A DNA stretch of 64,000 nucleotides from Mustelus asterias. Lineage: Eukaryota. The stretch lies in the NCBI RefSeq assembly GCF_964213995.1, contig NW_027590293.1:62001-126000 (forward strand), given 5' to 3'. Positions 15,337-56,324 of the stretch are shown here, piece after piece. How positions within the stretch are numbered: position 1 is the first letter of the stretch; the number at the start of each line of letters is the position of its first letter. The translations under genes were made by a program, and so were the position numbers. Below the pieces are notes generated by a model. It was given only the letters and a program-made list of their open reading frames with translations. It was not told the DNA's origin and did not search any database.

Positions 15337-16393
15337 TCTCAGTGTAACAATGACACACACAGACTCCAATACAATCAGAGTGGGGATGGAGCACAGAGAC
15401 AACACAGCAAAGCACTGACTTACTCTGAGTGTAACAATGACACACACAGGCTCCAATACAATCAGAGTGGGGATGGAGCACAGAGACAACACGGCAAAGC
15501 ACTGACTTACTCTGAGTGTAACAATGACACACACAGGCTCCAATACAGTCAGAGTGGGGATGGAGCACAGAGACAACACAGCAAAGCACTGACTTACTCT
15601 CAGTGTAACAATGACACACACAGACTCCAATACAGTCAGAGTGGGGATGGAGCACAGAGACAACACAGCAAAGCACTGACTTACTCTGAGTGTAACAATG
15701 ACACACACAGGCTCCAATACAATCAGAGTGGGGATGGAGCACAGAGACAACACAGCAAAGCACTGACTGACTCTGAGTGTAACAATGACACACACAGGCT
15801 CCAATACAATCAGAGTGGGGATGGAGCACAGAGACAACACAGCAAAGCACTGACTTACTCTGAGTGTAACAATGACACACACAGGCTCCAATACAATCAG
15901 AGTGGGGATGGAGCACATAGACAACACAGCAAAGCACTGACTTACTCTGAGTGTAACAATGACACACACAGACTCCAATACAATCAGAGTGGGGATGGAG
16001 CACAGAGACAACACAGCAAAGCACTGACTTACTCTGAGTGTAACAATGACACACACAGGCTCCAATACAATCAGAGTGGGGATGGAGCACAGAGACAACA
16101 CAGCAAAGCACTGACTTACTCTGAGTGTAACAATGACACACACAGGCTCCAATACAATCAGAGTGGGGATGGAGCACAGAGACAACACAGCAAAGCACTG
16201 ACTTACTCTCAGTGTAACAGTGACACACACAGGCTCCAATACAATCAGAGTGGGGATGGAGCACAGAGACAACACAGCAAAGCACTGACTTACTCTGAGT
16301 GTAACAATGACACACACAGGCTCCAATACAATCAGAGTGGGGATGGAGCACAGAGACAACACAGCAAAGCACTGACTTACTCTCAGTGTAACA
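15337..16393. repeat. 87-bp minisatellite, 12 copies plus a partial
   Basis: Unit starts at 15337, 15424 ... 16381; units are near-identical. Confidence 0.97.
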
Positions 16394-19300
16394 AATACAA
16401 TGTTTGTTCAAATAATAAGAGTCACGTTGCAGTATGTTAGCGAACACAGCATTAGATCCAATGTAATGGTAATACAGTCAGTATCTAGTGCACCAGAACC
16501 AAAGTTTAAGTTTCATTTGATAGTGTGAGTGAGTCATGGTCTATTGAGATAATGTATTTAGATTCCGGTGTGTGTTACTCTGCCACTGTCAGTATCAGAC
16601 AATAACCTGTCTGTTATTCCAATTCTGCTGTATTTTACATTCTGCTGTATTTCTGCTGTACTTTAACCTGGTGTTGTTAAAACTCTTACTGTATTTTACA
16701 ACTGCAGCTCCTGGGGCTGATTGGAGTCTGGTATAATCATCACAAAGGTTGGTTTCAGTGTCTCTGAGGTCATTTTAACTGCAGGTAATCTGACAAGGGA
16801 GACAAGAGGCCCAACAAACATTTGATTACAATAGGAGGACAAGGTGTAAGGGAGCAATGATATTTTAAGGTGTCTGTGTTATGGTGAGTGTCACTGGGAG
16901 GTGAGTGATAAAATAGAAGTGGAAACATCACGACAGATACATGTGACTGACTCGGCCTGACTGAGAGCTGTTATAGTCAAGGCGAGAATAATGAGGACAT
17001 GGCGAACTCCAGGGATTTCTGCAGTTCTCAAGTTACACACAGGAAACAGATGTGACAGCTCATCAAACCCAATGGTTTAATCTTCTGTTTGAGACACATT
17101 ATGACCGAAAAGATCAAACATTAAAACCTTAGGAGAGAAACATTCAGAATGTCACAAAGATGAGTGAACTGTCCAATTAATCCCATTCACCAGAACTCTG
17201 CCAATTTACCTTCTACACGTATTTATCCAATTCCCTTTGAAAGTTACTATTAAACCTGCTTCTAGCACCTGTCAGTTTGCGCATTCCAGATCATATCAAG
17301 TTATTGTGTGAAAAATTCTCCTTATCACCCCCTCCAGTTCTGTTGTCAATTATGTTAAATCTCTGTATCCTCTGCTCACAGACCCTCCTGCACCTGGGAA
17401 ATAGATTCTCTCCATCTTCCTGCTCCTGGGAGATAATTTCTCTCCATTGACACTATCATAAATCATTTGTCATTTTAAACATCTCTATTAAATCGCCCCA
17501 TCACATTCCCCAATCTAAGATGGATAACCCATGTTTTTCCTGCCCTGAAGAATTATATGGACTCAAAATGTTAACTGTTTCTCTCTGAACAGATGCCGCC
17601 GGATCTGCCGGGTTTTTCTGCTTTTCACCCTGTTTTTCCTTCTATAATCAATCAGAAACTCTTCATGATTTTGAACATCTCGATTAAATAGGAACACACA
17701 GAGCCTGAGAAAGATACAGAGCAAAGGAGAGACAGAAAGACTGAGAGAAAAATTGAGAAAGATTTTAAAAAGCAGAAAGTTGAGGTGGTCAAAGATAAAA
17801 GCTGAGAATCAGAGGAAACAAGCAATACAGAGAGAATGATATACAATATAAGGGAGCAGGCTATCAGTTCCCAGCTATGGGGAGCAGACGGAACTCAGTA
17901 ACTGATCCACAGACACAGCTGGTTATATCTGCGAATGGAAACTCTGAACAGAAATAACTGGCTCATTTGTAAATGTCACCACAATGTGACCTGTGTGACT
18001 CTGCCCTGACTCTGTGGACAGATAAAGGCCGCATTGACAGATGTTCTCACCAGATTGTGGTTCCTGGATTTATTTTCTGCTCAGAAGTGAGATGTGCGTT
18101 TTTGAACCGGCAGCAGAGAAGTTGTGTTACCTGAGAATGAAACAGCCGGTGTCAGTTTGATGTTATCACCGTGAACAGTCTTCCTGCCTGTGAGGGTGAA
18201 CTCACTCTGACAGCATCAAGAACAACCACACAGATTGCTGCCGGTCTCCACATTACATTCAGCTCCATTCCCATTTTAAACAATGAAGAAAGGAGATTAT
18301 TTGGATTTTTAACACATTCACTGAATTGGGAGATGGACTGAGGGTCATCACTGGGAGAAATGAGGAGGAATTAGAGAACAAATAAGTTTTCCCAAAGAGG
18401 GTTCTTAGAAAAGAGGAGATTTAAAGTGAGTGAGGGCCTGTCAGAGGAAGTGGGAGAGAGAAACAGAGAGGATTGAATCTTCATCAATTAGATGTTTTCT
18501 CAGACAGCAAAGAGAGATGAAGTTTGTTTGTGCTTTTTCAGAGAGAGGTAATGAGAGAGAGAAAACAATGAATAAGTTTAAGCAGATCTGAAATAGGAAG
18601 GTTAAATGAGTGAGTGTTTGAAAGAAAGGTAGAGAGACATTAAGTGATGAACACAGTATCTGAGAGGAGAGAGGTTAAGTGAATGTGAGAGAGGAGCGAG
18701 GTTATAGAGTGTAAGAGAGGTGGAAGGTGAGGTAAGTGTGAGTGAATGCCTGGAGAGAAAGAGCGATGTTCAGTGAGTGTTAGAGAGATGAGAGAGGTTA
18801 AGTGATTGAGTTTCTGAGGGAGAGGAGATGCTAAGTGAATGAATGTCTGAGAGGAGAGCAGGTTCACACCCAGGGGTCACTGAGAATGATCAAAATAAGG
18901 AGATCACCCAAAAAACTACCAACAGGAAACTTCAGCTGAACACATCACTCATTCTTAAATGGTCAGTCAGGGCTCTGTTGCTGCTCAGCTTCTCTCTGTT
19001 CTGTTTATAATGGTTAAAGGCTGATAGGAGTGAGGTTTATTTGAAAGGATAGTGTATGGGAAGCACACATCAACAAAACTGAGAATTTTTGGATACACAC
19101 TGCAGCTCCTTCTCTATCTGGGAATCAAATTGTTGTCTCATTGTCCCAGCAGTTAACAGGCTCCTTTGAACGTCTCCAGCTGCTACTTTAATGCAGACTT
19201 CAACCAATTTATTTGAAGCCAGTTTCTGTTCAATAAACCAGGACTGATGCACACACACATTAAAATGTTTTAGACTTTTTTTCATTCTCAGTCTGGAAAC

Positions 19301-19959
19301 CTAAACCTGCCGTTTCACTCTCAGTCAGGAATAGATCCCAGTTTTACACCAATCTTTGACAGCATGTTTCCAGCATTCACCATTGTTCTTCCTGACTCGA
19401 AACACAGTTGTAAAGGAGCTTCTTTTCCGTGTCTAGGAGGTCTGAACCATGGAAAAGAATGACTGGGACACATTTCTTACACACCTCAGGATTCACCCAC
19501 ACGGGGACTTTGCTGTCAGTGAAAAGTGACGAAAAAGACCAAAGTGCTGTTTGTCCCTCTCAGCGAGACCCTGAAGGACTGGGTCAAGAATGAAGTTCTG
19601 TTCCTACTGTATGATCCTCCCTCAGATTGCCCTTTCTGAGCTCCAGCCTGGTGACGTTAAACACTCAAATGGAAAAGTCAAAAATCTACAACAATGATTC
19701 AATCAAATGTCTATTTCACATTTATTCAGAATATCAAACCTCAACAGAAGAAAAAAATCAGAGAGAAGATGATTCAGACCTGGATATGATTAACAGCATC
19801 AATAAGTGTAGAATCCAAACCTGGCAGTCGTTTGTGAACTCGCCGGTGTGTTAGCAGGTGGGATGACTGAATAAATCCCTTTCCACAGACATTACAGGTG
19901 AACGGCCTCTCCCCAGTGTGAACTCGCTGGTGATTCAATAGGTTGGGTGAAAGAGTGAA

Positions 19960-21003
19960 TCACTTCCCACACACGGAGCAAGTGAATGGCCTCTCCTCAC
20001 TGTGAACCTGCTGGTGTGTCAGGAGATTGTATGAACGGGTGAATCCCTTCCCACATTCAGAGCAGGTGAATGGTCGATCTCCTGTATGGAGTTGCTGGTG
20101 TATCAGAAGGTTGAGTGAATTAATGAATCCCTTCCCACAGTCTGAGCAGGTGAATGGCCTCTCCCCAGTGTGAATTCTCTGGTGGTTCAATAGGGCAGAT
20201 GGACGGCTGAATCCCTTCCCACACACACAGCAGGTGAAGGGCCTCTCCCCAGTGTGAATTCTCTGGTGGTTCAATAGGGCAGATGGACGGCTGAATCCCT
20301 TCCCACACACACAGCAGGTGAAGGGCCTCTCCCCAGTGTGAATTCTCTGGTGGTTCAGTAGGGCAGATGGACGGCTGAATCCCTTCCCACACACACAGCA
20401 GGTGAAGGGCCTCTCCCCAGTGTGAATCCTCTGGTGGTTCAGTAGGGCAGATGGACGGCTGAATCCCTTCCCACACACACAGCAGGTGAATGGCCTCTCC
20501 CCAGTGTGAGTATATTGGTGCATTAACAGATCCTTTTTGTTTTTAAAACTCTTCTCATAGTCAGAACAATTAAAAAGTTTGTCAGAGTGAACAAGTTGAT
20601 GTGTCTGCAGGTGGGATGACTGAATGAATCCTTTCCCACACACAGAGCAGGTGAACAGTCTCTCCCCAGTATGAATGCATTGGTGTGTCAGCAGATCTTT
20701 TGTGCATTTAAAACTCTTCCCACAGTCAGAACATGTAAACAGTCTCTCATCAGTGTGAACAAGTTGGTGTGTCACAATGTGGGATGAGTGAGTGAATCCC
20801 TTCCCACACACAGGGCAGGTGAACAGCCTCTCCCCAGTGTGAACCCGTTGGTGTGTCAGAAGGTTGTATGAATGGGTGAATCCCTTCCCACAAACAGAGC
20901 AGGTGAACGGTCTCTCCCCAGTGTGACTACACCAATGAACTTCCTGTTGTGATGGGAAACCGAATCCTTTCCCGCAGTCCACACATTTCCACGGTTTCTC
21001 CAT
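19960..21003 (-). CDS. C2H2 ZNF Z3 (12 fingers, one degenerate, premature stop); paralog of Z7
   Basis: ORF from the ATG at 21003. GGA>TGA at 19960-19962 cuts off the last two fingers and the tail, which remain readable to ~19774. Finger 6 has C>Y. Confidence 0.8.
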   Translation of the reverse strand: MEKPWKCVDCGKGFGFPSQQEVHWCSHTGERPFTCSVCGKGFTHSYNLLTHQRVHTGERLFTCPVCGKGFTHSSHIVTHQLVHTDERLFTCSDCGKSFKCTKDLLTHQCIHTGERLFTCSVCGKGFIQSSHLQTHQLVHSDKLFNCSDYEKSFKNKKDLLMHQYTHTGERPFTCCVCGKGFSRPSALLNHQRIHTGERPFTCCVCGKGFSRPSALLNHQRIHTGERPFTCCVCGKGFSRPSALLNHQRIHTGERPFTCCVCGKGFSRPSALLNHQRIHTGERPFTCSDCGKGFINSLNLLIHQQLHTGDRPFTCSECGKGFTRSYNLLTHQQVHSEERPFTCSVCGK

Positions 21004-22373
21004 GGTGCTGGTGCCCTTGTTTCTCCAGGTTGGATGATCAGTTGAAACCTCGTCCACACACACAACATACATGTAGTTTCACCCTGCTGTGAACTGTGTG
21101 ATGTTCTTTCAGACTGTGGACTGGTTAAAGCTCTTTCCACAGTCAGTTCACTGGAACACTCTCAATCGGGTGTGTGTTTGTTCCAATGCTTTTCCGGTCA
21201 CACTGATGTTTAAAATCTTTGCCGACAGACAGAAGAGTCAAACATTTCTCCTCCCATATTCAAAGACCAATGATATTCAGCTCCGAAGGAACTGAATGAC
21301 TTTGCCAGTCATGATGTTCGGTTTGAGTTTTCTGTCTGCGAATCCTCCACTTCCAATATCCTGTAAAAAAAAATTTGGAAAAGTCATCACCGTCAGTCCG
21401 GGATAGAAATTCTGAACAGACAATTCTAGATTCTCTGGAACATTTTTTCCTCTCTTGTTCCCCAAAATCTGTAAATCCCCGTCCCACACACTCTCTCTCT
21501 CTCTCCTCCCTGGGCTTAAACCCATCTCACCATCTGCATCATTTCTTTCCCCCACTCCCAGTTTTCTCCCTCCCTCTCCTCTGTCTGGGTTCAGTTCTCC
21601 AGCTGCTGTCTGCAGACTGACAATAAAACAAATGGGTCTTATTGGGGGTGTTGGGTCTCCAGCGGGTGTTTGTGAATCCTCCCCGCCCACCTCCCAGGGT
21701 TCCCTTCCTTCCCAGAGATCAGAGTCCTCATTGATTTGAGGCCAAAGTGTAACCTCTTATTTATTGTCCCCCTCCCCCATCCTCTGATGTGAACCATCCT
21801 CCAGTGGCTGAGCCAGGATGGGGCCGTTAACCTGGGCCTGTTCCCGGGAGGGAGGGAGGGAGAAGCCCCGCAGCTGCAAACCAGGGAGCTGACAATGATT
21901 CTGAAGGGTTTGCGGATCCACAAAGTGTTTCCAAATCCTCCCAGCCACCGCCTAACGCTGACTCCGCTTCTCCGGGACAAACAAGCGCCAAGGACAGCAA
22001 TGACACTGCGCATGCTCCACATCACAATGCCCGGGGACTGATTGACGGCAGCTCTGGACCAATAGGAAGAGGGGGCGGGGCTGGAGGACCGAGCTGGAGC
22101 GGCTGGTCCTCCAACCAATCGGAGTGAATGAGGGGCGGGACCTGAAACATGCGCAGTGCGAGTAATGGCGACGGACGGCCGGTTTTTATGTGGAAGCGAG
22201 AATCAATACGAGGTAGAGGGCGGCGCGCGGGTAATGATAAATGTGGCGGGTGGGTGGAGAGGCTTTGTAAACATGTTGTTCAAACCCAACCCCCGGAAAT
22301 GAACTTCCGGGTCCCCCCCTTTGTGCCAAATGGAGCGGCAGCTTGTAGTGTTAGACCCGAGCTGACTGCCGCC

Positions 22374-29845: not shown

Positions 29846-31147
29846 TTCCAGGGGTTGGATTCTGCTGTTATTGTTTCTGCTCTCAATTACATCCAGGACT
29901 GCATTTTGTTCATTCTCACAGTTGGTCAATGGGGAGGGTCGGAGGGTTTCTTTCTGCTGGACTGGCCGGTCTCATGACTTTGCCTCCAGTGGGCTGATGC
30001 TCTTTGAGTCTTGTTGCGAATACCTGGTTTCAGATTTCACACGGATCACAGAGTGACAGGGTGTTAGGAAGTTCAGAGATTTTTAGTCAGCATTTCTGTT
30101 TGAAACTCCCCCAGATGCCCATCCAATTTCCTTTGTAATTGTTTATTGTCTCCACTTCCTCCACCCTCGTAGGCAGCAAGTTCCAGGTCATTACCATTCA
30201 CTGCATCAAAATATTCTTCCTCACATCCCCCCTTCCTCTCTGACCCAAAACCATAAATCTGTGTCCCCCTCGTCCTTCTCTCGTCAGCTAATGGGAACAG
30301 CTTTTCTTTGTCCATCTTATCTAAACCTGTCAGAATCTTGTCCACCTCTATCAAATCTACCCTCAACCTCCTTGCTCCAAGGGGAACAACCCTAGCCTGA
30401 CATTGACAATAAAGAACAAACTAACAGAATATGTTAATACCTGAAATCAAATGGGAATGTTTAATTTCTGTTTTAAAGAAATCATGAATATATTGTCCCG
30501 TACAATAAAGGGATTTGAATAACTCAGCTTGAGTGCAGTTGAATGAAATGTCTCAATCGCGTATCCACCCACAGTCGAGAGGAAGTGTGGAATGTGTAGC
30601 TGGAAATCCCTCCCTAACAGCACTGTGGGTGTACTTACACCTTCGGCATTATAGCAGTTCAGGAAGGCAGTGTTGGCGCTGATCGTGGCCGAGGCAGCTA
30701 CATACAGCCACATATTCTGTTATAACTGAAGGACTGCAGATTAAATGTGCGGCATTATGGGACTGGACTATCTTGACCACATTCCTGTGACTGCTCAGTT
30801 TCTGCAATCATGAACCATTAAAGCTGCTTAGCAGGGTCCTGACAGAGGACCTGGTGAGAATATTTACTCAGAATGAGTTAGAATGAAACTTATTCCAGGA
30901 CCGGCTGGTGTTCAGTGGCTGAGATTCCCGAATCTGTAAAAAGGGGGTCTGACCAGTGGTAGGTAGTCCGGTAAGAAGCGTTCTCATGCATTATTTAAAT
31001 TATTTTATCATGAAGTTGTGATCAGAACTGTGAGGGACTTGTAACCCAATAGTTGTTGAATTGACGGTAAACTCCAAGTAGCACTGGACTGAAAAGGGGG
31101 TCTGACCAAGAAGTGAAGTGATCTCAGGCATTGTTTAAATTACATCA

Positions 31148-31601
31148 TCATTGGCCAACTTCCCCTTTGTGATGTCACAATGGAGTCCTGCCTGAATCAG
31201 CCAATAGGAATCACTCTGCTCCGCGGTGACGTCTCTGGGTTCCAGTGCTCAGGCCTGGGCGCGCGGACCCGGGAGCCCCGCCCCCACCCATTGTTCCCCT
31301 CCCCCTGCACCTCATCGAGCCAAGGTTTCCAGGCAACCGGCTGGCGGCTCCGGCCAGAGCGAGAAGCTGCTCGGTGATCTCCCCCTCCCCCCGGCCCGGG
31401 ACTGCGCAGGTCCAAGGGAGGGGGAAGCTGCGAATTGCAGGGCAGATCCTGCCCCCTGACCTTCTGAGGTGTTGATTAATAGGAAGAGTTGAAGGACCGG
31501 AAGGACTCTGGTCCTTCAGCTGATCAGAGCGCGGGCTTTGCGTGAATGAAGATTGAGCTTCAGACAGACTGAAACTTCCTCCTGTCTCCAACATCAGAGA
31601 G
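31148..31601. promoter_or_regulatory. CpG-rich promoter-like region related to 50410-50520
   Basis: 31148-31212 is the reverse complement of 50411-50475, and 31555-31601 matches 50473-50517 directly. CCAAT, CRE-like and GC boxes are present. Confidence 0.55.
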
Positions 31602-31604
31602 GTT

Positions 31605-31677
31605 GTTTCTGTAGTGAAGTGGTTGTCACGTTTGCCTGACACGCGAAAGGTCCCCGGGTCAGAACCGGGCAGGAATG
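31605..31677 (+). tRNA. tRNA-Val-derived copy, anticodon GAC, probable pseudogene
   Basis: Aligns over 73 nt to vertebrate tRNA-Val (GTTTCCGTAGTGTAGTGGTTATCACG...). Stems pair, but the T-loop/B-box reads GGGTCAGAACC and there is no clear poly-T terminator. Confidence 0.75.
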
Positions 31678-32504
31678 TTAATTTGTTAATTCCAGCATCT
31701 GAAAGTGGGAAGGGGGAGGAAGGTGAGCTGTTGCCTGCCTGCCTGCTGTCCGGCCTGCCTGCCGTCTGGCCTGCCTGTCTTCCGTCCGTCCGCCCACTGG
31801 AGGGTGCTCTCTCCCTGGAGGGAGAGAGGACACGGAGTGACTTTCTTTCTTTTTTCTTTCCATCTATGGGAGGGAGGACTGCACGTTTCAACATCGAGGG
31901 ACTGAGTGGTTGGGCTGGTGCCCTCATCATCAGAAGGTCGGTGCCTGAAAGGGATGGGGGGGTGAAGTAAATTCAGACTGTTTTTTCCATCTGCGGGCGG
32001 GCGGGCGGGCGGGCGAAGACACCCCGGACTTGAACTGTTTGCGCCCAAAAGGGCTGGAGGAGTAAAGTCCCCCACCCACTGCTGCTGCCCCCAACACCGG
32101 CACCCCCTCCCCTCTTTCCCCCTGACTGGGGCACCGGCCCCCCTCCGTGCCTTGTCCCTCGTCCTCCCTCCTGCTCCTCCGACCTCCTCTCTCGCTCCGG
32201 GGAGAGAGCACCTAGATCCCCATCCACCTACCCTACCCTCCCTTATTTTTCCCTCCTCTTATACGCCCTGCCGTGGCAGAGCCTTCTCGGCCCACCTATG
32301 CGGGCGTGGCGGCTGCCAGAGCCCCCGCCGCTCCCAAGGCCCTGCCGTCTTTTTCGTTGCTCACGCGGCAGCTCGGGGTGAAGTGCTACGCCCACCCCGA
32401 CATGTCCATCGAGGCCTGTGTCAAGGCAATGGCTGGGGTTGTCGGCCCCTCAGCCATTGTCGCGGCCTCTAAGATGTACGGCCGGGCCGTATTCTTTTTG
32501 AAGG
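31678..32504 (+). mobile_element. Tx1-clade non-LTR retrotransposon, 5' UTR and ORF1 N-terminus (truncated)
   Basis: PTYAGVAAA...LTRQLGVKC...IEACVKAMAGVVGPSAIVAASKMYGRAVFF closely resembles Xenopus Tx1 ORF1p. The 5' boundary is uncertain. Confidence 0.8.
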
Positions 32505-32800
32505 CCACCCACCCGCCACATTTATCATTCCCCGCGCGCCGCCCTCTACCTTGTATTGTTCTCGCTTCCAAGTTGAAACCGTCCGTCCGCCGCCGCCATT
32601 ACCCGCACTGCGCATGCTTCAGGTCCCGCCCCTCATTCACTCCGATTGGTTGGAGGACCAGCCGCTCCCGCTCGGTCCTCCAGTCCCGCCCCCTCTTCCT
32701 ATTGGTCCGGAGCTGGCGTCAATCAGCTCCCGGGCATTGTGATGTGGAGCATGCGCAGTGTCATTGTTGGCCTTGGCGCTTGTTTGTCCCGGAGAAGCGG
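32505..32800 (+). promoter_or_regulatory. ZNF CpG promoter module (paralogs at 15100-15300 +, 21960-22370 -, 55925-56323 +)
   Basis: CpG-rich, with NRF1-like TGCGCATG, GC boxes, two ATTGG (CCAAT) boxes and YY1-like CGCCAT; conserved in four copies upstream of ZNF genes. Confidence 0.75.
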
Positions 32801-33749
32801 AGTCAGCGTTAGGCGGTGGCTGGGAGGATTTGGAAACACTTTGTGGATCCGCAAACCCTTCAGAATCATTGTCAGCTCCCTGGTTTGCAGCTGCGGGGCT
32901 TCTCCCTCCCTCCCGGGAACAGGCCCAGGTTAACGGCCCCATCCTGGCTCAGCCACTGGAGGATGGTTCACATCAGAGGATGGGGGAGGGGGACAATAAA
33001 TAAGAGGTTACACTTTGGCCTCAAATCAATGAGGACTCTGATCTCTGGGAAGGAAGGAAACCCTGGGAGGTGGGCGGGGAGGATTCACAAACACCCGCTG
33101 GAGGCCCCAACACCCCCAATAAGACCCATTGGTTTTATTGTCAGTCTGCAGACAGGAGCTGGAGAACTGAACCCAGACAGAGTAGAGGGAGGGAGAAAAC
33201 TGGGAGTGGAGGAAAGAAATGGTAGAGATGGGTTTGGATTTCAGCCCAGGGAAGAGGGAGAGTGTGTGGGACGGAGATTTACAGATTTGGGGGAACAAGA
33301 GAGGAAAAAATGTTCCAGACGAACTAGAATTGTCTGTTCAGAGTTTGTATCGTGTTCTGACAGTGATGACTTTTCTAAACTGTTTTTACAGGATATTGGA
33401 AGTGAAAGATTGGCAGACAGAAAATTCAAACCGGACATCACATCTGACAAAGTCATTCAGTTCCTTCGGAGCTGAATATCATTGGTCTTTGAATATAGAA
33501 AGAGAAATATTTGTCTGTTCTGCCTGTGGGCAAAGAAATTAAACATCACTGTGACTGGAAAAGCATCGAGACAAACACACACCCGAGTGAGAGTGTTCCA
33601 GTGAACTGAATGTGGAAAGAGCTTTAACCAGTTACACAGCCTGAAAAAACATCACAGTTCACAGCAGGGTGAAACTACGTGTATGTTGTGTGTGTGGATG
33701 AGGCTTGAACTGATCATCCAACCTGGAGAAACACAAGGACACCCGCACC

Positions 33750-34730
33750 ATGGAGAAACCGTGGAAATGTGTGGATTGTGGGAAGGGATTCGGTTTCCCA
33801 TCACAACTGGAAGTTCATCGGCGCAGTCACACTGGGGAGAGACCGTTCACCTGCTCCGTCTGTGGGAAGGGATTCACCCATTCATACAACCTTCTGACTC
33901 ACCAACGGGTTCACACTGGGGAGAGGCCGTTCACCTGTCCTGTGTGTGGGAAGGGATTCACTCGCTCATCCCACATTGTGACACACCAACTTGTTCACAC
34001 TGATGAGAGAATGTTTACATGTTCTGACTGTGAGAAGAGTTTTAAATGCAAAAAGGATCTGCTGACACACCAACGAATTCACACTGGGGAGAGACCGTTC
34101 ACCTGCTCTGTGTGTGGGAAAGGATTCATTCAGTCATCCCACTTGCAGACACATCAACTTGTTCACTCTGATAACAAACTTTTTAATTGTTCCCACTGTG
34201 CGAAGAGCTTTAAAAATAAAAAGGATCTGCTAACGCACCAATATGCTCACACTGGGGAGAGGCCATTCACCTGCTGTGTGTGTGGGAAGGGATTCAGCCG
34301 TCCATCTGCCCTATTGAACCACCAGAGAATTCACACTGGGGAGAGGCCCTTCACCTGCTCAGACTGTGGGAAGGGATTCACTCGTTCATCCAACTTATTG
34401 AATCACCAGCGAGTTCACACTGGGGAGAGGCCGTTCACCTGCTCTGTGTGTGGGAAGGGATTCAGTCAGTCATCCAACCTGCTGACACACCAGAAAGTTC
34501 ACAGTGCGGAGAGGCCACTTACCTGCTCTGTCTGTGGGAAGGGATTTTCTCATTTATCTTATCTTCTGAAACACCAGCGAGTTCACACTGGGGAGAGGCC
34601 GTTCACCTGTAATGTCTGTGGAAAGGGATTTATTCAGTCATCCCACCTGCTAACACACCAGCGAGTTCACAAACGACTGCAAGGTTTGGATTCTACTCTT
34701 AATGATGCTGTTAATCATATCCAGGACTGA
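33750..34730 (+). CDS. C2H2 ZNF Z7 (11 fingers plus an 18-aa C-terminal tail)
   Basis: Intact 326-aa ORF with an upstream CpG promoter module and a splice acceptor at 33390-33391. Confidence 0.92.
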
Positions 34731-35376
34731 ATCGTGTTCACTCTGACAGTCTTCATCCGTTGAGGTTTAATATTCTGAATAAATATGAAATAGACCAGCT
34801 TTGTTTTTTAAAATTGTTGTAGATTTTTGTCTTTCCCACCTGACTGTTTAACATCACCAGGCTGGAGCTCAGAAAAGACAATCGGGGGTGGATCATATGG
34901 CAAACAGGACGCAGTCCTTCAGGGTCACAGAGGGACAAACAGCACTTTGCTCTTCCTCGTCTCTCTTCACGACAGCAAAGTACCCGTGTGGTTTAATCCT
35001 GAGATGTGCAAGAATCTCAGTCACTCCCTTCTATGTTTCAGCGCTCCTAGACCAGGAACAGAAGTTCCTTTACAACTGTGTTTAGAGTCAGGAAGAACAA
35101 CAGTGAATGCTGGAAGCATGCTGCTAAATCAGAGATTGGTGCAAAACTGGGATCTGTTCCTGACTGAGAGTGAAATGGCAGGATTAGATTTCCAGACTGA
35201 AAATGCAGAAAAGTCTAAAATATTTTAATGTGTTTGTGTGTCAGTGCCAGTTTATTGAACAGAAACCAGCTCAAAATAAATTGGTTAAAGTCTGCATTAA
35301 AGTAGCAGCTGGAGAGTTCAAAGGAACCTGTTATCTGCTGGGACAATTAGACAACAATTTGATTCCCACTGAGACC

Positions 35377-35415
35377 CACAGTGAATGAGGCTCCCGCGGG
35401 CCTCATACAAAAAGT
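35377..35415 (+). other. Orphan 23-RSS with an 8-nt V-end remnant (35369-35376)
   Basis: Perfect CACAGTG + 23 nt + ACAAAAAGT. The preceding CTGAGACC matches the intact V end CTGAGCCC at 7/8. Confidence 0.85.
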
Positions 35416-35799
35416 GACGCAGACGTTTCAGGGTCAGAGAAAAAGAGTCGGATCTCAACGAAAATGCGCAGGAAATGAAGGCCACAATACAGCCCCAGCT
35501 GAATAATATTCCCCCACTGAGCTCAGCCATTGTCAGTGTTGTGAAATGTCACATTTGCCATCCTATTATTCCCGGATCAAATCCAACCATTCTCCGATCC
35601 CATCCGCACAAAATCTGCAGATTACCCCGGGTGAATAACTTCCTTAATCTGTACTTAGAAAAATTCTGGATTCGGTGCCTATCTGCCCGGCGACACATTT
35701 TAAAAGTGATCTATTATCAAATGCAGCCTCAGAATTGTTCCATTTTCAAGTCCGTGGAGCAGAAATAATAACTGATTGAAATCAGAGCTTTTCTATTTG

Positions 35800-36260
35800 G
35801 GGAATAGAGGGGTACAGTGAAGATTTACTATGCTGATTCCTGGGATGGCAGCTCTGTCATATGAGGAGAGATTAAATCCGTTAGGATTATATTCACTGCG
35901 GTTTCGAATAGTGAGAGGGGGTCTCATAGAAACTTATAAAATTCTAACAGGGTTCGACAGGGTAGATCCAGAAGACTGTTCCCAATGGTGGAATCCAGAA
36001 CCATGGGTCATCTTTTGAAGATAAGGGAAAAACTGAGGTGAAGGGAAATTCTTTCATCCAGAGAGTGTTGAATGTATGGAATTCAATACCACCGAATGTA
36101 GTTGAGGCCAAAACGTTGTCTGATTTCAAGAAGAAATTTGATATAGCTCTTGGGGCTAAAGGGGTCGAGGGGGAAGGAGGATCAGGATATTGAATTCCAT
36201 GATCAGCTATGATTACGATGAATGGCGGAGAAGGCTCCTGCTTCTAGTTTCTATGTTATG
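35800..36260 (+). mobile_element. CR1 3' fragment
   Basis: LSYEERL..LGLYSL..RGGLIETYKI. Confidence 0.75.
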
Positions 36261-36384
36261 AGTCCGTGAAATATTTCCTGGTGCAGAGTTGAGTGACTAC
36301 TTATCCCCGGTATACTTACAGCACTAACTATTAATTATGTTGAGTCCTGGATGCTACTCATTAATCCCTGTACGTTAGGCTGCT

Positions 36385-36689
36385 GAATCATTGAATCCCG
36401 ACAATGCAGGATGGAGCCTGTCCCGACAACAATCCCACCCAGGCCCTATCCCCGTAACCCACATATTTACCCTGCTATCCCCTGACACTTAGGGTAATTT
36501 TGCGTGGCCAATCCAGCAAACCTGCACAGTTTAGGAATGTGGAGGGAAACTGGAGCACCTGAGGAAACCCACGCAGACACGGTGAGAAAGTGCAAACTCC
36601 ACAGAGACAGTGACCCGAGGCTGGAATCGAACCCGTGTCCCTGGGGCTGTGAGGCAACAATGCGAACCACTGCGCCACCGTGTCACCCA
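36385..36689 (-). mobile_element. HE1/V-SINE (diverged)
   Basis: Same consensus. Confidence 0.8.
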
Positions 36690-36915
36690 TAAATGATTAA
36701 ATTAGAAAAAAGGATCTGCCTTAAGAAAGATTGATGGACTGAGTTCTGAGGAAAGCGAGTTAACCAGTTAATGAGACAGAATAAGTGATGATGTGGGAGA
36801 GAGCAGAGAGAGAGCAAAGACTTTAGAAATAAGTTTACGGCCAGGGAAGGAATGTGATTGGAAAGTGCCAGCTATATTAAATCATTAACTAACAGTGATT
36901 GGTTCACTGGTTACG

Positions 36916-37237
36916 GGGCGGCATGATGCCACAATGGTCAGCGCTGCTGTCTCACAGTGTCAGGGACCCGGGTTCAATTCCGGCTTCGGATCACTTTCTG
37001 TCTGAGTTTGCATGTTCTCCCAGTGTCTACGTGGGTCCCCTTCGGGTTCTCCTGTTTCCTCCCACAGTCCAAAGATGTGCAGGTTAGGTTGATTGGCCAT
37101 GCTAAATTGACCCGAGCGTCAGGGGATACGCAGGGTAAATACATGGAGTTGCGGGAGTGGAGCCTGGGTGGTATTGTGACCGGTATAGACTCGATGGGGC
37201 GAATGGCCTCCTTCTGCACTGCAGGGATTTTATGATT
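36916..37237 (+). mobile_element. HE1/V-SINE abutting the V promoter
   Basis: Same consensus; ends a few bp before the CRE palindrome. Confidence 0.85.
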
Positions 37238-37240
37238 CGC

Positions 37241-37346
37241 AGCTGACGTCAGCTCAGGGAGATGAGCCAATCGCAGCACTGAGAAACGCCTCCCTGTTTC
37301 TGAATACTTGAAGCTGCCTCTGATCTGAGTTCACTCTGTGATATAA
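37241..37346 (+). promoter_or_regulatory. V-segment promoter: CRE palindrome, CCAAT, TATA-like
   Basis: AGCTGACGTCAGCT (37241-37254), CCAAT (37267) and ATATAA (37341), 60-165 bp upstream of the leader ATG. CRE elements are characteristic of TCR V promoters. Confidence 0.7.
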
Positions 37347-37404
37347 GACTAGAGGCAGCAACTTATTGTAAACATTGTCGCTGCTTACTGTCCAATCAGG
37401 AACC

Positions 37405-37842
37405 ATGTATCTCCTGTGTGCTTTACTGATAACAATGACCACGCTGCCCGGTGAGTCTGAGCTCAGATCCTCAGTGTGTGTTTCATGGGTTATATTTGTT
37501 CACAGATTTCTCACACATTCTACATTTTGTTGCAGGAATCAATGGCCAAGATTCAGTTTCCCAGGACCCGGCTGAATTAACGGTTCAGGAAGGATTGAAC
37601 GTAATAGTGAATTGTAATTACACAACAACGGATGCTTTTCCAAATCTCTTCTGGTACATCCAGTATCCCGGGGAAGCTCCGAGATATTTACTGCAGAAAT
37701 ATAGCACGGGGGGCGGAGAAAAGTCTCCAGATTTCCCTGACCGGTTTTCTGCTGATTTGGACAAGGACAAGAAAACAGTTCCTTTAAATATCACTGGGGT
37801 CCATGTCTCTGACTCTGCCGTGTATCACTGTGCGCTGAGCCC
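37405..37842 (+). CDS. T-cell receptor alpha/delta-type V gene segment (leader exon 37405-37450, intron 37451-37535, V exon 37536-37842)
   Basis: 46-nt hydrophobic leader exon MYLLCALLITMTTLP-G with gtgagt donor and ttgcag acceptor. The Ig V fold has CNY, LFWYIQYPGEAP, RFS and DSAVYHCALS, followed by an RSS. Confidence 0.93.
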
Positions 37843-37881
37843 CACACTGCTACAGAGGCGCAGTGAGCCCGTACAAAAACC
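37843..37881 (+). other. Recombination signal sequence, 23-bp spacer
   Basis: CACACTG + 23 nt (ctacagaggcgcagtgagcccgt) + perfect nonamer ACAAAAACC, directly after the V exon. Confidence 0.93.
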
Positions 37882-38077
37882 TGCAAAGGCACTCTCACCT
37901 CCTCTCACTGAATCAGATCTGTGACCTGGATTGTGAACTGTTAATACAAACAGAACAATTGTATAACGAAGAGTTAGTCCGAATGTTCTCATTCCATGGT
38001 GCTGAATGTGCCATTCTTGTTTAAACACTCTGCAATGCTGAGACTGGGAGAAGTGAACAACAGGGGGCAGCATTGCA

Positions 38078-39170
38078 GCTTCCATTTTACTATTATTCCT
38101 TCCAAAGTGGATAAGCTCACACTTACCAACGCTATACTCCATCTGCCAGATCCTCGCCCACTCACTTAGCCTATCCAAATCTCTCTGCAGACTTACCGCA
38201 TCCTCCACGCAATTCACTTTCCCACTCATCTTTGTGTCATCCGCAAACTTTGTTACCCAACACTCGGTCCCCTCCTCCAGATCGTCTATGCATATGGTAA
38301 ATACTTGAGGCCCCGGCACCAATCCCTGTGGCACGCCACTAGTCACCAACTGCCAACCAGAAAAGCACCCATTTATTCCAACTCTCTGCTTCCTGTTAGA
38401 TAGCCAATCCCCAATCCACGCTAACACTTTACCCCTAACTCCGTGCACCCTGATTTTCTGCAGCAACCTTTTGTGAGGCACCTTATCGAACGCCTTCTGG
38501 AAATCCAAAAACACCACATCCACTGGTTCCCCTCTGTCAACCGCACTCGTTACATCAACATAAAAATCCAGTAAATTTGTCAAACACGACTTTCCCTTCA
38601 TGAATCCATGCTGCGTCTGCTTGATCAAACCATTTTTTTCCAGGTGTCCTGCTATTTCTTCCTTAATGATGAATTCCAGCAATTTCCCAACTACGGACGT
38701 TAAGCTAACCGGCCTGTAGTTACCCGCCTTTTGTCTACCTCCTTTTTTAAACAGTGGCGTCACATTAGCTGTTTTCCAATCAGCCGGCACTTCCCCAGAG
38801 TCCAGCGTATTTTGATAAATTACAACCAACGCATCCTCTATTACTTCTGCCATTTCTTTCAGTCCCCTGGGATGCATTCCATCCGGGCCCGGGGACTTGT
38901 CTACCTTTAGTCCCATTAGCCTCCTAAGCACTACCTCTTTAGTAATAGTAATCATTTTAAGGACCTCATCCCCTACAGTCCCATGACCGTCAATTTTCGG
39001 TAAGCTATTTGTGTCCTCTACCGTGAAGACTGATACAAAAAACTTGTTTAAGGCCTCAGCCATTTCCTCGTTTCCCATTATTAAATCCCCCTTCTCATCT
39101 ACTAAGGGTCCAACATTTACTTTAGCTACTCTTTTCCTTTTTATATATTTGTAAAAACTTTTACTATCTC
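38078..39170 (-). mobile_element. CR1 RT fragment
   Basis: KSPGPDGMHPR, NYRPVSLTSV, FLDFQKAFDKV and KFADD. Confidence 0.9.
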
Positions 39171-39175
39171 TCTGT

Positions 39176-39277
39176 CCCCCCCCCCCCCCGGGCTTTGCCC
39201 CCCCCCCCGGGCTTTGCCCCCCCCCGGGCTTTGCCCCCCCCCCCCGGGCTTTGCCCCCCCCGGGCATTGCCCCCCCA
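39176..39277. repeat. (Cn-GGGCTTTG) x5 GC repeat
   Basis: Poly-C tracts separated by gggctttg or gggcattg. Confidence 0.9.
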
Positions 39278-39397
39278 ACCCACACATCCTGGGACACTAA
39301 GTGGCAATTGAGCATGGCCAATCAACCTAACCTGTACATCTTATAAACAGTAAGAAGTCTCACAATACCAGGTTAAAGTCCAACAGGTTTATTTGAT

Positions 39398-39436
39398 CGC
39401 ACGAGCTTTCGGAGCACTGCTCCTTCATCAGGTGAA
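39398..39436 (-). ncRNA. Minimal type I hammerhead ribozyme motif in a Penelope fragment (39345-39505)
   Basis: CAC-CUGAUGA-A-GGAGC/AGU/GCUCC-GAAA-GCUC-GUG. Confidence 0.7.
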
Positions 39437-40240
39437 TGGCCACTCACCTGATGAACCTGGTGTTGTGTGCCCACCCCAGTCCAACGCCGACATCTCCACG
39501 TCATCTTATGGACTGCAGATTGATTCTCTGTAGAATCCTGTTCTTTCTCTCTATCAACATTCCTCTGCAAGTTTTATTTCCTTCAAGTACCCATCCAATT
39601 TCATTTTGAAATGATTGAATCTTCTGTTCCACCATCCTCATAGGCAGCGAGTTCTAGATCATGTGCTCTCCCTACCTAAATATAAATCTTCCTCAAATCC
39701 CTGCTCTACCACTACTCAAGTAATGTCCTGTATGTTACACTTTTATCCAGTATTATAGACATCTGTCTGGCAGCCTGCATGGAGATTTTCAGCTCCCTGT
39801 GTCCAGGACAGGAAGCCGTGAGCATGGATCTGTCAATCAGCCTCAATCAGCACCTTCAGGAGAATTGGGAGGGTGAATATTAGATACAGCAGAGTGAGAA
39901 TTGAGGGAGAGTGTGTGGGATGGAGATTTACTGCGTTTGGGGAATGAGAGAGGAAAGAATGTTCCATAGAAACTAGAATTGTCTGTTCTGAATTTCTGTC
40001 CTGTACTGACACTGATGAATTTTGTAATCTCCTTTTGCAGGATATCAGAAGGTGGGGATTTACAGACAGAAATCTCGAATCAAACGTCACATCAACATCT
40101 GACAGACATTTGATTGATTGGGACCCGAATATCATTGGCCTTTCAATCTTGAAGGAGAAATCTTTTAATGTTCTGTCTGCGTCAGAATTTTTTATAACAT
40201 AAATGTGACTGGAAATACACCAAGACACAGACACACCTGA

Positions 40241-53326: not shown

Positions 53327-54944
53327 AAATGTCAGAGGTAATAGTGGATGCGTTAGTGATTATTTATCAAAACTCGTTGCATTCTGGGGTAGTGCCGGTT
53401 GATTGGAAAACGGCTAATGTTACGCCGCTGTTTAAAAAAGGAAGGAGACAAAAGGCGGGTAACTATAGGCCGGTCAGCTTAACGTCTGTAGTAGGGAAAA
53501 TGCTGGAATCCATTATTAAAGAGGAGATAGCAGGGCATCTGGATAGAAATGGTTCGATCAATCAGACGCAGCATGGATTCATGAGGGGAAAGTCGTGCTT
53601 GACGAACATGTTGGATTTTTATGAAGATGTGACTAGGGCGGTTGATGGAGGAGAACCGGTGGATGCGGTGTTTTTGGATTTCCAAAAGGCGTTTGATAAG
53701 GTGCCCCATAAAAGGCTGCTGAAGAAGATTAGGGCACACGGAGTTGGGGGTAGTGTGTTAAAGTGGATTGGGGACTGGCTATCCGACAGGAAGCAAAGAG
53801 TCGGAATAAATGGGTGTTTTTCCGGTTGGAGGAAGGTAACTAGTGGCGTGCCGCAGGGATCGGTACTCGGGCCGCAACTGTTTACCATTTATATAGATGA
53901 TCTGGAGGAGGGGACGGAGTGTAGGGTAACGAAGTTTGCAGACGACACAAAGATAAGTGGAAAAGTGAATCGTGTGGAGGACGGAGAAGATCTGCAGAGA
54001 GATTTGGACAGGCTGAGTGAGTGGGCGAGGATATGGCAAATGGAGTATAACGTTGACAAATGCGAGGTTATACACTTGAGGAAATAATAACAAATGGGAT
54101 TACTATCTCAATGGAAACAAATTAAAACATGCTACCGTGCAAAGGGACCTGGGGGTCCTTGTGCATGAGACGCAAAAGCCCAGTCTGCAGGTACAACAGG
54201 TGATCAAGAAGGCAAATGGGATGTTGGCCTATATTGCGAAGGGGATAGAATATAAAAGCAGGGATGTCTTGATGCACCTGTACAGGGCATTGGTGAGGCC
54301 GCAGCTGGAATACTGTGTGCAGTATTGGTCCCCTTATATGAGGAAGGATATATTGGCATTGGAGGGAGTGCAGAGGAGGTTCACCAGGTTGATACCGGAG
54401 ATGAGGGGTTTGGATTATGAGGAGAGGCTGAGGAGATTGGGTTTGTACTCGTTGGAGTTTAGAAGGATGAGGGGGGATCTTATGGAGACTTATAAGATAA
54501 TGCGGGGGCTGGATAGGGTGGAGGCGGAGAGATTCTTTCCACTTAGTAAGGAAGTTAAAACTAGAGGACACAGCCTCAAAATAAAGGGGGGTCGGTTTAA
54601 GACAGAGTTGAGGAGGAACTTCTTCTCCCAGAGGGTGGTGAATCTCTGGAATTCTCTGCCCACTGAGGTGGTGGAGGCTACCTCGCTGAATAGGTTTAAA
54701 GCGCGGATGGATGGATTCCTGATCGGTAAGGGAATTAAGGGTTATGGGGATCAGGCGGGTAAGTGGTACTGATCCACGTCAGATCAGCCATGATCTTATT
54801 GAATGCCGGGCAGGCTCGAGGGGCTAGATGGCCTACTCCTGCTCCTATTTCTTATGTTCTTATTTATTTGTCTGGCAGCCTGCATGGAAATTTTCAGCTC
54901 TCTGCATCCAGGGCAAGAAGCAGTGAGCATGGATCTGTCAATCA

Positions 54945-55915: not shown

Positions 55916-56324
55916 GGCTTCACTCTCCGATCACAATCCCTGCCGGCCTCCCACATGCAGCCTCAATGGCGGCAGTCAGCCCGGGTCTAACACTACAAGC
56001 TGCCGCTCCATTTGGTACAAAGGGGGGGAACCGGGAAGTTCATTTCCGGGGATTGGGTTTGAACAACATGCTTACAAAGTCTCTCCACCCACCCGCCACA
56101 TTTATCATTCCCCGCACGCCGCCCTCTACCTCGGATTGATCTCGCTTCCGAGTTAAAACCGTCCGTCCGTCGCCATTACCCGCACTGCGAATGCTTCAGG
56201 TCCCGCCCCTCCTTCACTCCGATTGGTTGGAGGACCAGCCGCTCCAGCTCGGTCCTCCAGACCCGCCCCCTCTTCCTATTGGTCCGGAGCTGCCGTCAAT
56301 CAGTCCCCGGGCATTGTGATGTGG

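What the first reader, a model, noticed from the sequence alone, without database searches (positions are those of the whole stretch)
35361..35415. Headless 23-RSS fused to the end of a duplicated ZNF gene block
Seen: the Z7 block (32505-35368) is an inverted copy of 19119-22257, and homology stops at gattccca. The next 8 nt (CTGAGACC) match the end of the intact V (CTGAGCCC). They are followed by perfect CACAGTG, exactly 23 nt and ACAAAAAGT, in the same orientation as the V RSS 2.5 kb downstream. A ZNF gene has therefore replaced a V coding region and left a consensus-heptamer RSS. Inference: RAG could join the ZNF flank to 12-RSS J/D segments, acting as a decoy or somatically moving the ZNF gene toward TCR enhancers in T cells. 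The break lies 8 nt inside the coding end, so it is not a clean RAG signal-end junction.
Basis: partly seen in the sequence, partly recalled or inferred. Interest (0 to 1): 0.85.

Follow-up and report, generated by a model that had tools for sequence, protein, structure and literature searches.

The report
Orphan RAG signal from lost V
A complete RAG recombination signal carrying only the last 8-10 bases of a T-cell-receptor V gene is fused to the tail of a duplicated zinc-finger gene in a shark genome; it is most likely an ordinary evolutionary leftover that RAG might still be able to cut.

Summary
CACAGTG (35377-35383), a 23-nt spacer and ACAAAAAGT (35407-35415) lie 8 nt past the point where the inverted ZNF copy (32505-35368 vs 22257-19119) stops matching. 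The 8 nt between them (CTGAGACC) match the coding end of the intact V-alpha/delta segment 2.5 kb downstream at 7 of 8. They also match the published V-alpha end consensus at 7 of 8, in the canonical register. Chance is excluded.

It is a V relic: the last 8-10 nt of a V plus its 23-RSS, with the V body gone from the whole 64-kb window. I could not tell whether the junction is the end of the duplication or a later deletion. RAG did not cut this RSS to make it.

The proposed function (decoy, or moving the ZNF gene to TCR enhancers) is untested. The window has no D, J or C. No listed read contig bridges the junction: contigs of two runs stop within 4 nt of it, and one carries other letters to its left. 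A polymorphism or mis-join is therefore not excluded.

RSSs without a coding segment are known (mouse deltaREC1-5, PMC4995090). The scan noted the same structure on two other pieces of this genome (unchecked). Modest interest.

The parts
19119..22257 (-). ZNF gene block, copy B, the inverted partner of 32505-35368
   Evidence: blastn (90.3% and 78.9% segments). Identity outside the finger array is 93.4% in the 5' part and 86.2% in the 3' flank.
32505..35368 (+). ZNF gene block, copy A. Its 3' flank ends at the junction.
   Evidence: The left edge at 32505 abuts a tRNA/Tx1-type insertion (tRNA at 31605-31677). A third copy at 56085-56324 shares that edge.
33750..34730 (+). ZNF open reading frame of copy A, 326 aa, 11 C2H2 fingers
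   Evidence: ORF. Pfam zf-C2H2 E 4.4e-68, 11 stretches.
35367..35368 (+). CA dinucleotide that fits both the ZNF copy and a canonical V end, so the junction is ambiguous by 2 nt
   Evidence: Copy B also ends ...gattccca. The V-alpha end consensus has C at position 5 and a free third codon position at 6 (PMC10322711 passage). The X2 contig alignment starts exactly at 35367.
35369..35376 (+). V coding-end stub CTGAGACC
   Evidence: 7 of 8 to the neighbouring V's end. 7 of 8 to CTGAGGCC, the end of the published V-alpha consensus, with T8G9 in register.
35377..35383 (+). RSS heptamer CACAGTG (consensus)
35384..35406 (+). 23-nt spacer, near-palindromic
   Evidence: DNA hairpin -7.4 kcal/mol, z -2.28, 4 of 200 shuffles fold as well. 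8 of 23 identical to the V's spacer.
35407..35415 (+). RSS nonamer ACAAAAAGT, 7 of 9 to ACAAAAACC. The two differences are at positions 8-9.
35416..35793 (.). Low-copy DNA behind the RSS with no other copy in the window; presumably the old V-to-V intergenic DNA
   Evidence: No blastn hit elsewhere in the window. Low read-contig depth (38.5-52.7 in X1, against thousands over the repeats further right). No Pfam family in its ORFs.
35794..37237 (.). Interspersed repeats between the orphan RSS and the V: repeat pieces at 35794-36143, and an inverted pair of SINE-like copies at 36411-36688 and 36916-37237
   Evidence: Many copies in the window. Very high contig depth and 'opposite strands' joints.
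37405..37450 (+). Leader exon of the intact V segment (ATG to the GT donor)
   Evidence: Read from the sequence (ATG, hydrophobic leader, GTGAGT). This is inference; the joined leader+V was not searched.
37536..37842 (+). V exon of the intact TCR alpha/delta-type V segment
   Evidence: Pfam V-set E 1.1e-17, 64.6 bits against a cut-off of 26. It holds the only YxC V motif found in six frames.
37826..37832 (+). CACTGTG embedded in the V's Tyr-His-Cys-Ala codons. Exactly 10 nt of coding end follow it.
   Evidence: It bears only on the low-probability RAG-cut reading.
37843..37881 (+). The intact V's 23-RSS, CACACTG-23-ACAAAAACC

Best explanation
This is the fossil 3' end of a TCR alpha/delta V segment. 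The last 8-10 nt of coding sequence and the complete 23-RSS survive. The rest of the V was lost in a germline rearrangement that joined this point to the 3' flank of a ZNF gene copy.

That rearrangement was either the end of the inverted ZNF duplication or a later deletion. The join has at most 2 nt of microhomology, and it was not made by RAG cutting this RSS.

The relic is carried passively in a V region that, in this shark, is interleaved with ZNF clusters.

Shown: the anatomy, the V origin of the stub, the sharp end of homology, and the absence of the V body.

Inferred: the heptamer is consensus, the spacer is 23 nt and nonamer positions 1-7 are consensus. If the site lies in cis to 12-RSS D/J segments and is accessible in thymocytes, RAG could therefore cut it. 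That would give a non-productive deletional joint of the deltaREC type. Nothing here indicates a selected function.
For: - RSS anatomy and rarity.
- V stub: 7 of 8 to the neighbouring V, with a background frequency of 4e-4.
- The stub equals positions 7-14 of the V-alpha end. In zebrafish that end is published as TGTGCTCTGAGGCC before the heptamer, with the RSS at position 15 and T8G9 conserved in cartilaginous fish (PMC10322711 passages).
- It has the same strand and the same spacer class as a real V 2466 nt away, which scores Pfam V-set 1.1e-17.
- Homology to the ZNF partner ends sharply and does not resume.
- No second V fragment in the window: tblastn gives only the self hit below E 0.1, and there is 1 YxC motif in six frames.
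- The region is low-copy in read contigs, so it is not part of a repeat family.
- The spacer (8 of 23) and the 3' flank (15 of 60; 42 of 500 shuffles reach the local score) are unlike those of the neighbouring V. The relic therefore comes from a different or old V, not from a recent copy of the neighbour's RSS.
- The A and B copies are 6.6-13.8% diverged. Two nonamer mismatches and none in the heptamer are within what drift allows.
Against: - No listed contig bridges 35368/35369 (0 of 32 listed pieces; 215,288 more were not shown).
- X1 contigs that match exactly end at 35368 and restart at 35407. An X2 contig covers 35367-35661 but has 12 letters on its left that do not fit the window.
- No 31-mer or 25-mer at the junction is repeated inside the window. 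The breaks therefore need another copy, another haplotype or a coverage gap that I could not see.
- The parent V was not found: phmmer of the read-through frame gave 2 irrelevant hits, and the 70-aa ORF across the junction gave none.
- The direction of the event (duplication end or later deletion) is unresolved.
- RAG usability is inferred from the consensus only; no RIC score was computed.
Confidence: 0.7

Rival explanations
1. Assembly mis-join or structural polymorphism. In the real genome, or in other haplotypes or individuals, this RSS is still attached to an intact V, and the ZNF-RSS junction is chimeric or present in only some chromosomes.
For: -: X1 contigs with 0 differences end at 35368 and restart at 35407.
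- the X2 contig ends at 35364.
- another X2 contig (307 nt, 5 differences) aligns only from 35367, the first base that could be V-derived, and has 12 non-fitting letters to its left.
- nothing inside the window explains these breaks.
Against: - The A-type ZNF flank exists in X1 with 0 differences right up to 35368.
- Bin depths over 35369-35436 in X1 exceed what the two listed contigs supply, so something else covers the gap (my own arithmetic, rough).
- The window has no N.
- Two scan notes describe the same 8-nt stub at a ZNF breakpoint on other pieces of the assembly. These are unchecked and may be the same locus.
Confidence: 0.15
2. A functional deleting element or decoy of the deltaREC/KDE type. 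On this reading the headless 23-RSS is kept by selection and is used by RAG to make non-coding joints that delete downstream V/D/J DNA, or that bring the ZNF gene next to the J-C region.
For: - The heptamer is consensus, better than that of the intact V (CACACTG), and the spacer is exactly 23 nt.
- Mouse has five bona fide RSSs without a coding segment that RAG uses (PMC4995090 passages).
- Organism B, another species, holds look-alike contigs over about 35404-35512.
Against: - No D, J, C or 12-RSS in the window, and cis linkage is unknown.
- No somatic data.
- The state of the RSS is compatible with drift at the divergence of the flanking copies.
- Its origin as the debris of a rearrangement needs no function.
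- Conservation of the RSS itself in organism B was not seen: no listed X6 piece covers it.
Confidence: 0.08
3. A chance cryptic RSS in ZNF-flanking DNA, unrelated to any V.
For: Perfect heptamers are common: CACAGTG occurs 25 times on both strands of the window. Sites with 3 mismatches to the full RSS occur at about the chance rate.
Against: Heptamer, 23-nt spacer and nonamer together are expected 0.02 times per window. The canonical V coding end directly in front has a further probability of about 4e-4. The site is also on the same strand as a real V and 2.5 kb from it.
Confidence: 0.02
4. The end of a RAG-like or Transib-type transposon, or of another mobile element whose terminal repeat looks like an RSS.
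For: The heptamer is at the exact start of non-homologous DNA plus 8 nt. The spacer is palindromic.
Against: - No inverted 12-RSS partner in the window: 0 exact matches, and the one 3-mismatch match lacks CAC and is on the same strand.
- The region is low-copy in read contigs.
- No transposase-like ORF.
- The 8-nt V stub is not explained.
Confidence: 0.02

Closest known systems
deltaREC elements of the mouse and human TCR alpha/delta locus (deltaREC1-5)
   Same: A bona fide V-type 23-RSS with no associated coding segment, inside or next to TCR alpha/delta V DNA, in the orientation of the V segments. In mouse such sites join to the Trdd 12-RSS and truncate the locus (PMC4995090, passages read; PMC2198968, passages).
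   Different: Use by RAG, a position upstream of D/J in cis, and conservation across species are all unknown here. This one carries a recognisable V stub and sits at a rearrangement breakpoint, which marks it as debris. Whether the deltaRECs began the same way I do not know.
Kappa deleting element / RS of the Ig kappa locus
   Same: An isolated heptamer-spacer-nonamer without a gene segment that serves as a recombination target. This is recalled; only reference titles were seen.
   Different: It belongs to a different locus and lineage. KDE lies downstream of C-kappa and has a defined role in locus inactivation; nothing of the kind is shown here.
Truncated V pseudogenes and relics in Ig/TCR V clusters (birth-and-death evolution)
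   Same: A V segment damaged by duplication or deletion in a V cluster, with part of the segment left behind.
   Different: The cut here is extreme: only 8-10 nt of coding end remain and the RSS is intact. The partner is a ZNF gene flank, not another V. I read no paper that describes such a case. The listing was not followed up, so I make no claim about what is in print.
Cryptic RSSs (off-target CAC sites)
   Same: A possible RAG target outside a functional gene segment (PMC4995090 passages).
   Different: This is a full RSS of V origin with a nonamer and a correct spacer, not a bare CAC or a lone heptamer.

Membership tests
V-type 23-RSS | Heptamer starting CAC and close to CACAGTG | tested here: met
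   CACAGTG, 7 of 7.
V-type 23-RSS | Spacer of 23 (+/-1) nt | tested here: met
   35384-35406 is 23 nt.
V-type 23-RSS | A-rich nonamer close to ACAAAAACC | tested here: met
   ACAAAAAGT, 7 of 9, with the A run intact.
V-type 23-RSS | Flanks a complete V coding segment | tested here: not met
   Only 8-10 nt of V end remain. There is no V body in the window.
V-type 23-RSS | Cleaved by RAG (RIC score, substrate assay, somatic joints) | not testable with these tools
   No RIC model and no thymus data. The listed runs are contigs with no run on record as RNA.
Truncated V relic | The coding flank is V-derived and in the canonical register to the RSS | tested here: met
   CTGAGACC against CTGAGCCC of the neighbouring V: 7 of 8. 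Against the published CTGAGGCC: 7 of 8, with the TG at positions 8-9 and the heptamer at position 15.
Truncated V relic | A parent or sister V with the same RSS spacer and 3' flank exists | tested here: inconclusive
   None in the window. The protein-level searches were blank. The X2 contig with a different left flank is a hint only.
deltaREC/KDE-type deleting element | A bona fide RSS not associated with a coding segment | tested here: met
deltaREC/KDE-type deleting element | Lies in cis, upstream of 12-RSS D/J partners of the same locus | tested here: inconclusive
   No J motif, no 12-RSS and no C in the 64 kb. The chromosome context was not available.
deltaREC/KDE-type deleting element | Recurrent somatic joining to those partners | not testable with these tools
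deltaREC/KDE-type deleting element | Conserved between species | tested here: inconclusive
   Contigs of organism B lie on about 35404-35512 and 35617-35731, but no listed piece covers the RSS.
RAG-like / Transib transposon end | A second, inverted end with the complementary spacer class, plus a target-site duplication | tested here: not met
   No inverted 12-RSS. The region is low-copy.

The most novel reading that the evidence does not exclude
The amputation itself may be a germline RAG event of the V-replacement type. Counting the ambiguous CA, the V-derived stub is at most 10 nt (35367-35376). That is exactly the length that lies behind the CACTGTG embedded in the Tyr-His-Cys-Ala codons of the intact neighbour (37826-37832, followed by 10 nt).

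A RAG cut at such an embedded heptamer would leave this footprint attached to the 23-RSS, with 0-2 nt trimmed. Shark germ cells are reported to rearrange Ig genes (PMC2193156; title and start of abstract only).

If this is true, and if the orphan RSS is also still used in thymocytes, a ZNF gene flank would be a somatic RAG substrate created by an earlier germline RAG accident.
Probability: 0.07. Interest if true: 0.6.

Novelty: new member of a known kind. Interest (0 to 1): 0.3.

Why it matters
If RAG uses this RSS in shark thymocytes, that would show that headless RSSs of the deltaREC kind arise simply as debris of V-cluster turnover. It would also show that a non-immune gene, a ZNF, can become the 'coding end' of a V(D)J joint. 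That bears on how deleting elements originate and on RAG off-target risk in a genome where V segments are interleaved with other gene families.

If it is not used, it is one more pseudogene fragment. Its use is then mainly as a dated marker of ZNF and V cluster rearrangement. It also warns annotators that RSS scans in this genome will pick up V-less signals.

Tried and rejected
- Chance cryptic RSS: rejected.
- Recent copy of the neighbouring V's RSS: rejected. Spacer 8 of 23, 3' flank 15 of 60, local score reached by 42 of 500 shuffles.
- Hidden homology between the two ZNF copies beyond the junction: rejected (382 of 500 shuffles reach the score).
- Transposon end: rejected.
- V body elsewhere in the window: not found. 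tblastn gave only the self hit, with the next best at E 0.13 over 19 aa; nucleotide search gave nothing.
- Parent V by protein look-alikes of the frame that reads through the RSS: phmmer on 1.84 billion representatives gave 2 hits, both long low-complexity proteins and irrelevant. The 70-aa minus-strand ORF across the junction had no candidate. Length windows and clustering make both blanks weak.
- V exon search: 1 hit of 2 candidates, P0001. It is a germline paralogue read through its own RSS and resembles the intact V, not the orphan.
- Rfam on 30000-40000: one tRNA only.
- Bacterial promoter/terminator scan on 35000-35100: irrelevant to a vertebrate locus and a wasted call.
- Literature on ZNF genes inside shark TCR V regions: searches listed nothing obvious. 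PMC12227049 has 0 occurrences of 'zinc finger' or 'ZNF'. I make no claim that it is not in print.
- RIC score: not computed, because no model was on hand.
- Supplementary files were not opened. The supplementary tables of PMC10322711 may hold the shark V-end consensus, which I could only take from the text (zebrafish sequence, and the statement that T8G9 is conserved in cartilaginous fish).
- The leader and V exon were not joined for any search.

Full report
**What is there.** The window is a cluster of C2H2 zinc-finger genes. 84-nt finger repeats occur in many blocks on both strands, and the ORF at 33750-34730 has 11 fingers. A single TCR alpha/delta-type V segment sits among them.
- Leader exon: 37405-37450.
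- V exon: 37536-37842, Pfam V-set E 1.1e-17.
- RSS: CACACTG-23-ACAAAAACC at 37843-37881.

Six-frame motif scans found 1 V-like YxC motif and 0 J-like motifs. tblastn with the V exon found only itself.

At 35377-35415, on the same strand and 2466 nt upstream of the V's RSS, lies CACAGTG, exactly 23 nt, then ACAAAAAGT.

**Is it more than chance?** The exact pattern CACAGTG-N23-ACAAAAA occurs once in the window. It is expected 0.02 times, and 2 of 100 shuffles had a match. Among 39-nt consensus matches with up to 3 mismatches (4 found, 0.93 expected), this site and the V's RSS are the two best.

The 8 nt in front of the heptamer, CTGAGACC, match the V's last 8 coding nt at 7 of 8. Only 52 of 127,984 positions in the window do as well.

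They also match the V-alpha coding end given in PMC10322711. That paper gives TGTGCTCTGAGGCC up to the heptamer in zebrafish, with the RSS at position 15 from the Cys codon. It states that T8G9 is conserved in cartilaginous fish (passages read). The stub equals positions 7-14, in register. The site is therefore V-derived.

**The junction.** The block 32505-35368 is an inverted copy of 22257-19119.
- Identity is 93.4% in the 5' part and 86.2% in the 3' flank outside the finger array.
- Homology ends at ...gattccca in both copies and does not resume. The local score of the two outer flanks is at the null, with 382 of 500 shuffles reaching it.
- 35369-35793 has no other copy in the window.
- The CA at 35367-35368 fits both the ZNF copy and a canonical V end (C5, N6). 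The break is therefore ambiguous by 2 nt and the V stub is 8-10 nt.

**How the junction arose: two models.**
- (a) The junction is the end of the inverted duplication, pasted into a V.
- (b) Copy A once had a flank like that of copy B, and a later deletion fused it to the V end.

Model (b) explains directly why no V body remains anywhere in the 64 kb. Model (a) needs an extra loss. A third ZNF copy (56085-56324, continuing at 55968-56084) shares the inner edge of the block with copy B. Copy A is interrupted there by a tRNA/Tx1-type insertion. That inner edge therefore says nothing about the event.

**Relation to the neighbouring V.** The spacer (8 of 23) and the 60 nt behind the nonamer (15 of 60) are at chance level, and 42 of 500 shuffles reach the local score of the longer flanks. 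By contrast P0001, a database paralogue of the intact V at 74% identity, keeps the V's RSS and its 3' flank in the read-through translation. The orphan thus comes from a different or much older V, not from a copy of the neighbour.

**Reads.** One run search and one laying were allowed. All four runs are Logan contigs, and none is on record as RNA. The region 35369-35730 is low-copy, whereas the repeats from 35731 on reach depths of thousands and more. The RSS therefore belongs to no repeat family.

The junction is not confirmed. Of the 32 listed pieces, 0 bridge 35368/35369 (215,288 pieces were not shown).
- In X1, the best holder and possibly the source sample, a contig with 0 differences ends at 35368 and the next starts at 35407.
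- In X2, a contig ends at 35364.
- Another X2 contig, 307 nt long, aligns from 35367 to 35661 with 5 differences and has 12 letters on its left that do not fit the window.
- An X5 contig of 689 nt fits 35071-35368 with 28 differences and runs on unlike the window. That is what copy B would give.

No 25-mer or 31-mer at the junction is repeated within the window. The breaks therefore point to another copy, another haplotype or a coverage gap.

The X2 contig starts to fit exactly at the first base that could be V-derived. That hints that a version of this RSS with another left flank exists in the species, possibly the intact V, as an allele or a paralogue. This keeps a mis-join or a polymorphism alive as a rival (0.15).

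**Context from the scan's notes (AI notes, unchecked).** V segments embedded in ZNF or tRNA clusters without D, J or C are noted on many other pieces of this genome. Two notes describe an orphan 23-RSS with an 8-nt V stub at a ZNF duplication breakpoint on other pieces (s1-892802 and s1-891891). They may be the same locus on alternative pieces, or paralogous copies. In X1 the contig depths over the ZNF flank and the RSS region (62.9, 41.8, 38.5) are higher than over the V (23.2). That would fit extra identical copies, but it is a rough reading.

**How it most likely works.** It is a passive relic.

From established knowledge of RSS function, the critical parts are all present: CAC and the rest of the heptamer, a 23-nt spacer and the A run of the nonamer. 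This is recalled; the consensus is as quoted in PMC4995090.

If the site is in cis to 12-RSS partners and accessible in thymocytes, RAG could pair it with a D-delta or J-alpha 12-RSS. The coding joint would be ZNF 3' flank-J or ZNF 3' flank-D. It would be non-productive and would delete the intervening DNA, including the V at 37536-37842 if the J segments lie to the right.

This is what the mouse deltaREC elements do. [quoted passage not shown]

Nothing here shows use or selection. At 7-14% divergence of the flanking copies, zero heptamer changes and two nonamer changes are unremarkable.

**A bolder reading that is not excluded.** In the intact V, CACTGTG (37826-37832) is embedded in the Tyr-His-Cys-Ala codons, and exactly 10 nt of coding end follow it. 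The maximal stub at the orphan is also 10 nt. A RAG cut at such an embedded heptamer would leave this footprint on the 23-RSS. The principle is that of VH replacement, which is recalled and comes from no call. Germline RAG activity in sharks is reported (PMC2193156; only the title and the start of the abstract were seen, in listings 25 and 46).

Against it: the partner flank in copy B shows no CAC at or near the break, the coincidence was found post hoc, and the lost V's sequence is unknown. I give it about 0.07.

**Verdict.** It is a new member of a known kind (V relics; RSSs without a coding segment). Interest is modest.

Noticed in passing
window 35368/35369 and 35406/35407: In run X1, contigs identical to the window end at 35368 and restart at 35407. 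The missing 38 nt are exactly the stub, the heptamer and the spacer. No 25- or 31-mer there is repeated in the window. This is unexplained; it could be another copy, another haplotype or a coverage gap.
   Followed up: partly
window 35384-35406: The orphan RSS's spacer is a near-palindrome (ATGAGGC...GCCTCAT around CCCGCGGG). As single-stranded DNA it folds at -7.4 kcal/mol, z -2.28, and 4 of 200 shuffles fold as well. The intact V's RSS does not stand out (z -0.97).
   Followed up: partly
window 37826-37832: A perfect CACTGTG is embedded in the Tyr-His-Cys-Ala codons of the intact V, 10 nt before its own heptamer. The paralogue P0001 has the same YHCA.
   Followed up: partly
window 37825-39321 (-): A 498-aa ORF with a reverse-transcriptase domain (RVT_1, E 1.7e-29) lies on the opposite strand directly behind the V's RSS. 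A related copy is at 53327-54077. A LINE is inserted within about 100-250 nt of a functional-looking RSS.
   Followed up: partly
window 15337-16394: A tandem array of an 87-nt unit: 12.2 copies, 97% matches. Its nature is unknown.
   Followed up: no
window 31605-31677: A tRNA-like sequence (Rfam tRNA, 45.1 bits) lies just left of the point (32505) where ZNF copy A loses homology to copies B and C. This agrees with the scan note on a tRNA/Tx1 insertion.
   Followed up: partly
window 36411-36688 and 36916-37237: An inverted pair of SINE-like repeats lies between the orphan RSS and the V leader, with at least ten more copies in the window. Read contigs show 'opposite strands' joints between them, as expected of a multi-copy family.
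   Followed up: no
window 35240-35267: A 12-RSS-like string (GTCAGTG-12-ACAGAAACC, 3 mismatches) lies in the ZNF 3' flank 110 nt upstream of the orphan RSS. It lacks CAC and occurs at the chance rate (expected 1.05).
   Followed up: yes
window 34750-38000, run X1: Depths of the exact-match contigs fall from 62.9 (34750-35095) through 41.8 and 38.5 (around the RSS) to 23.2 (the V gene). This may mean extra identical copies of the ZNF flank and RSS region elsewhere in the genome.
   Followed up: no
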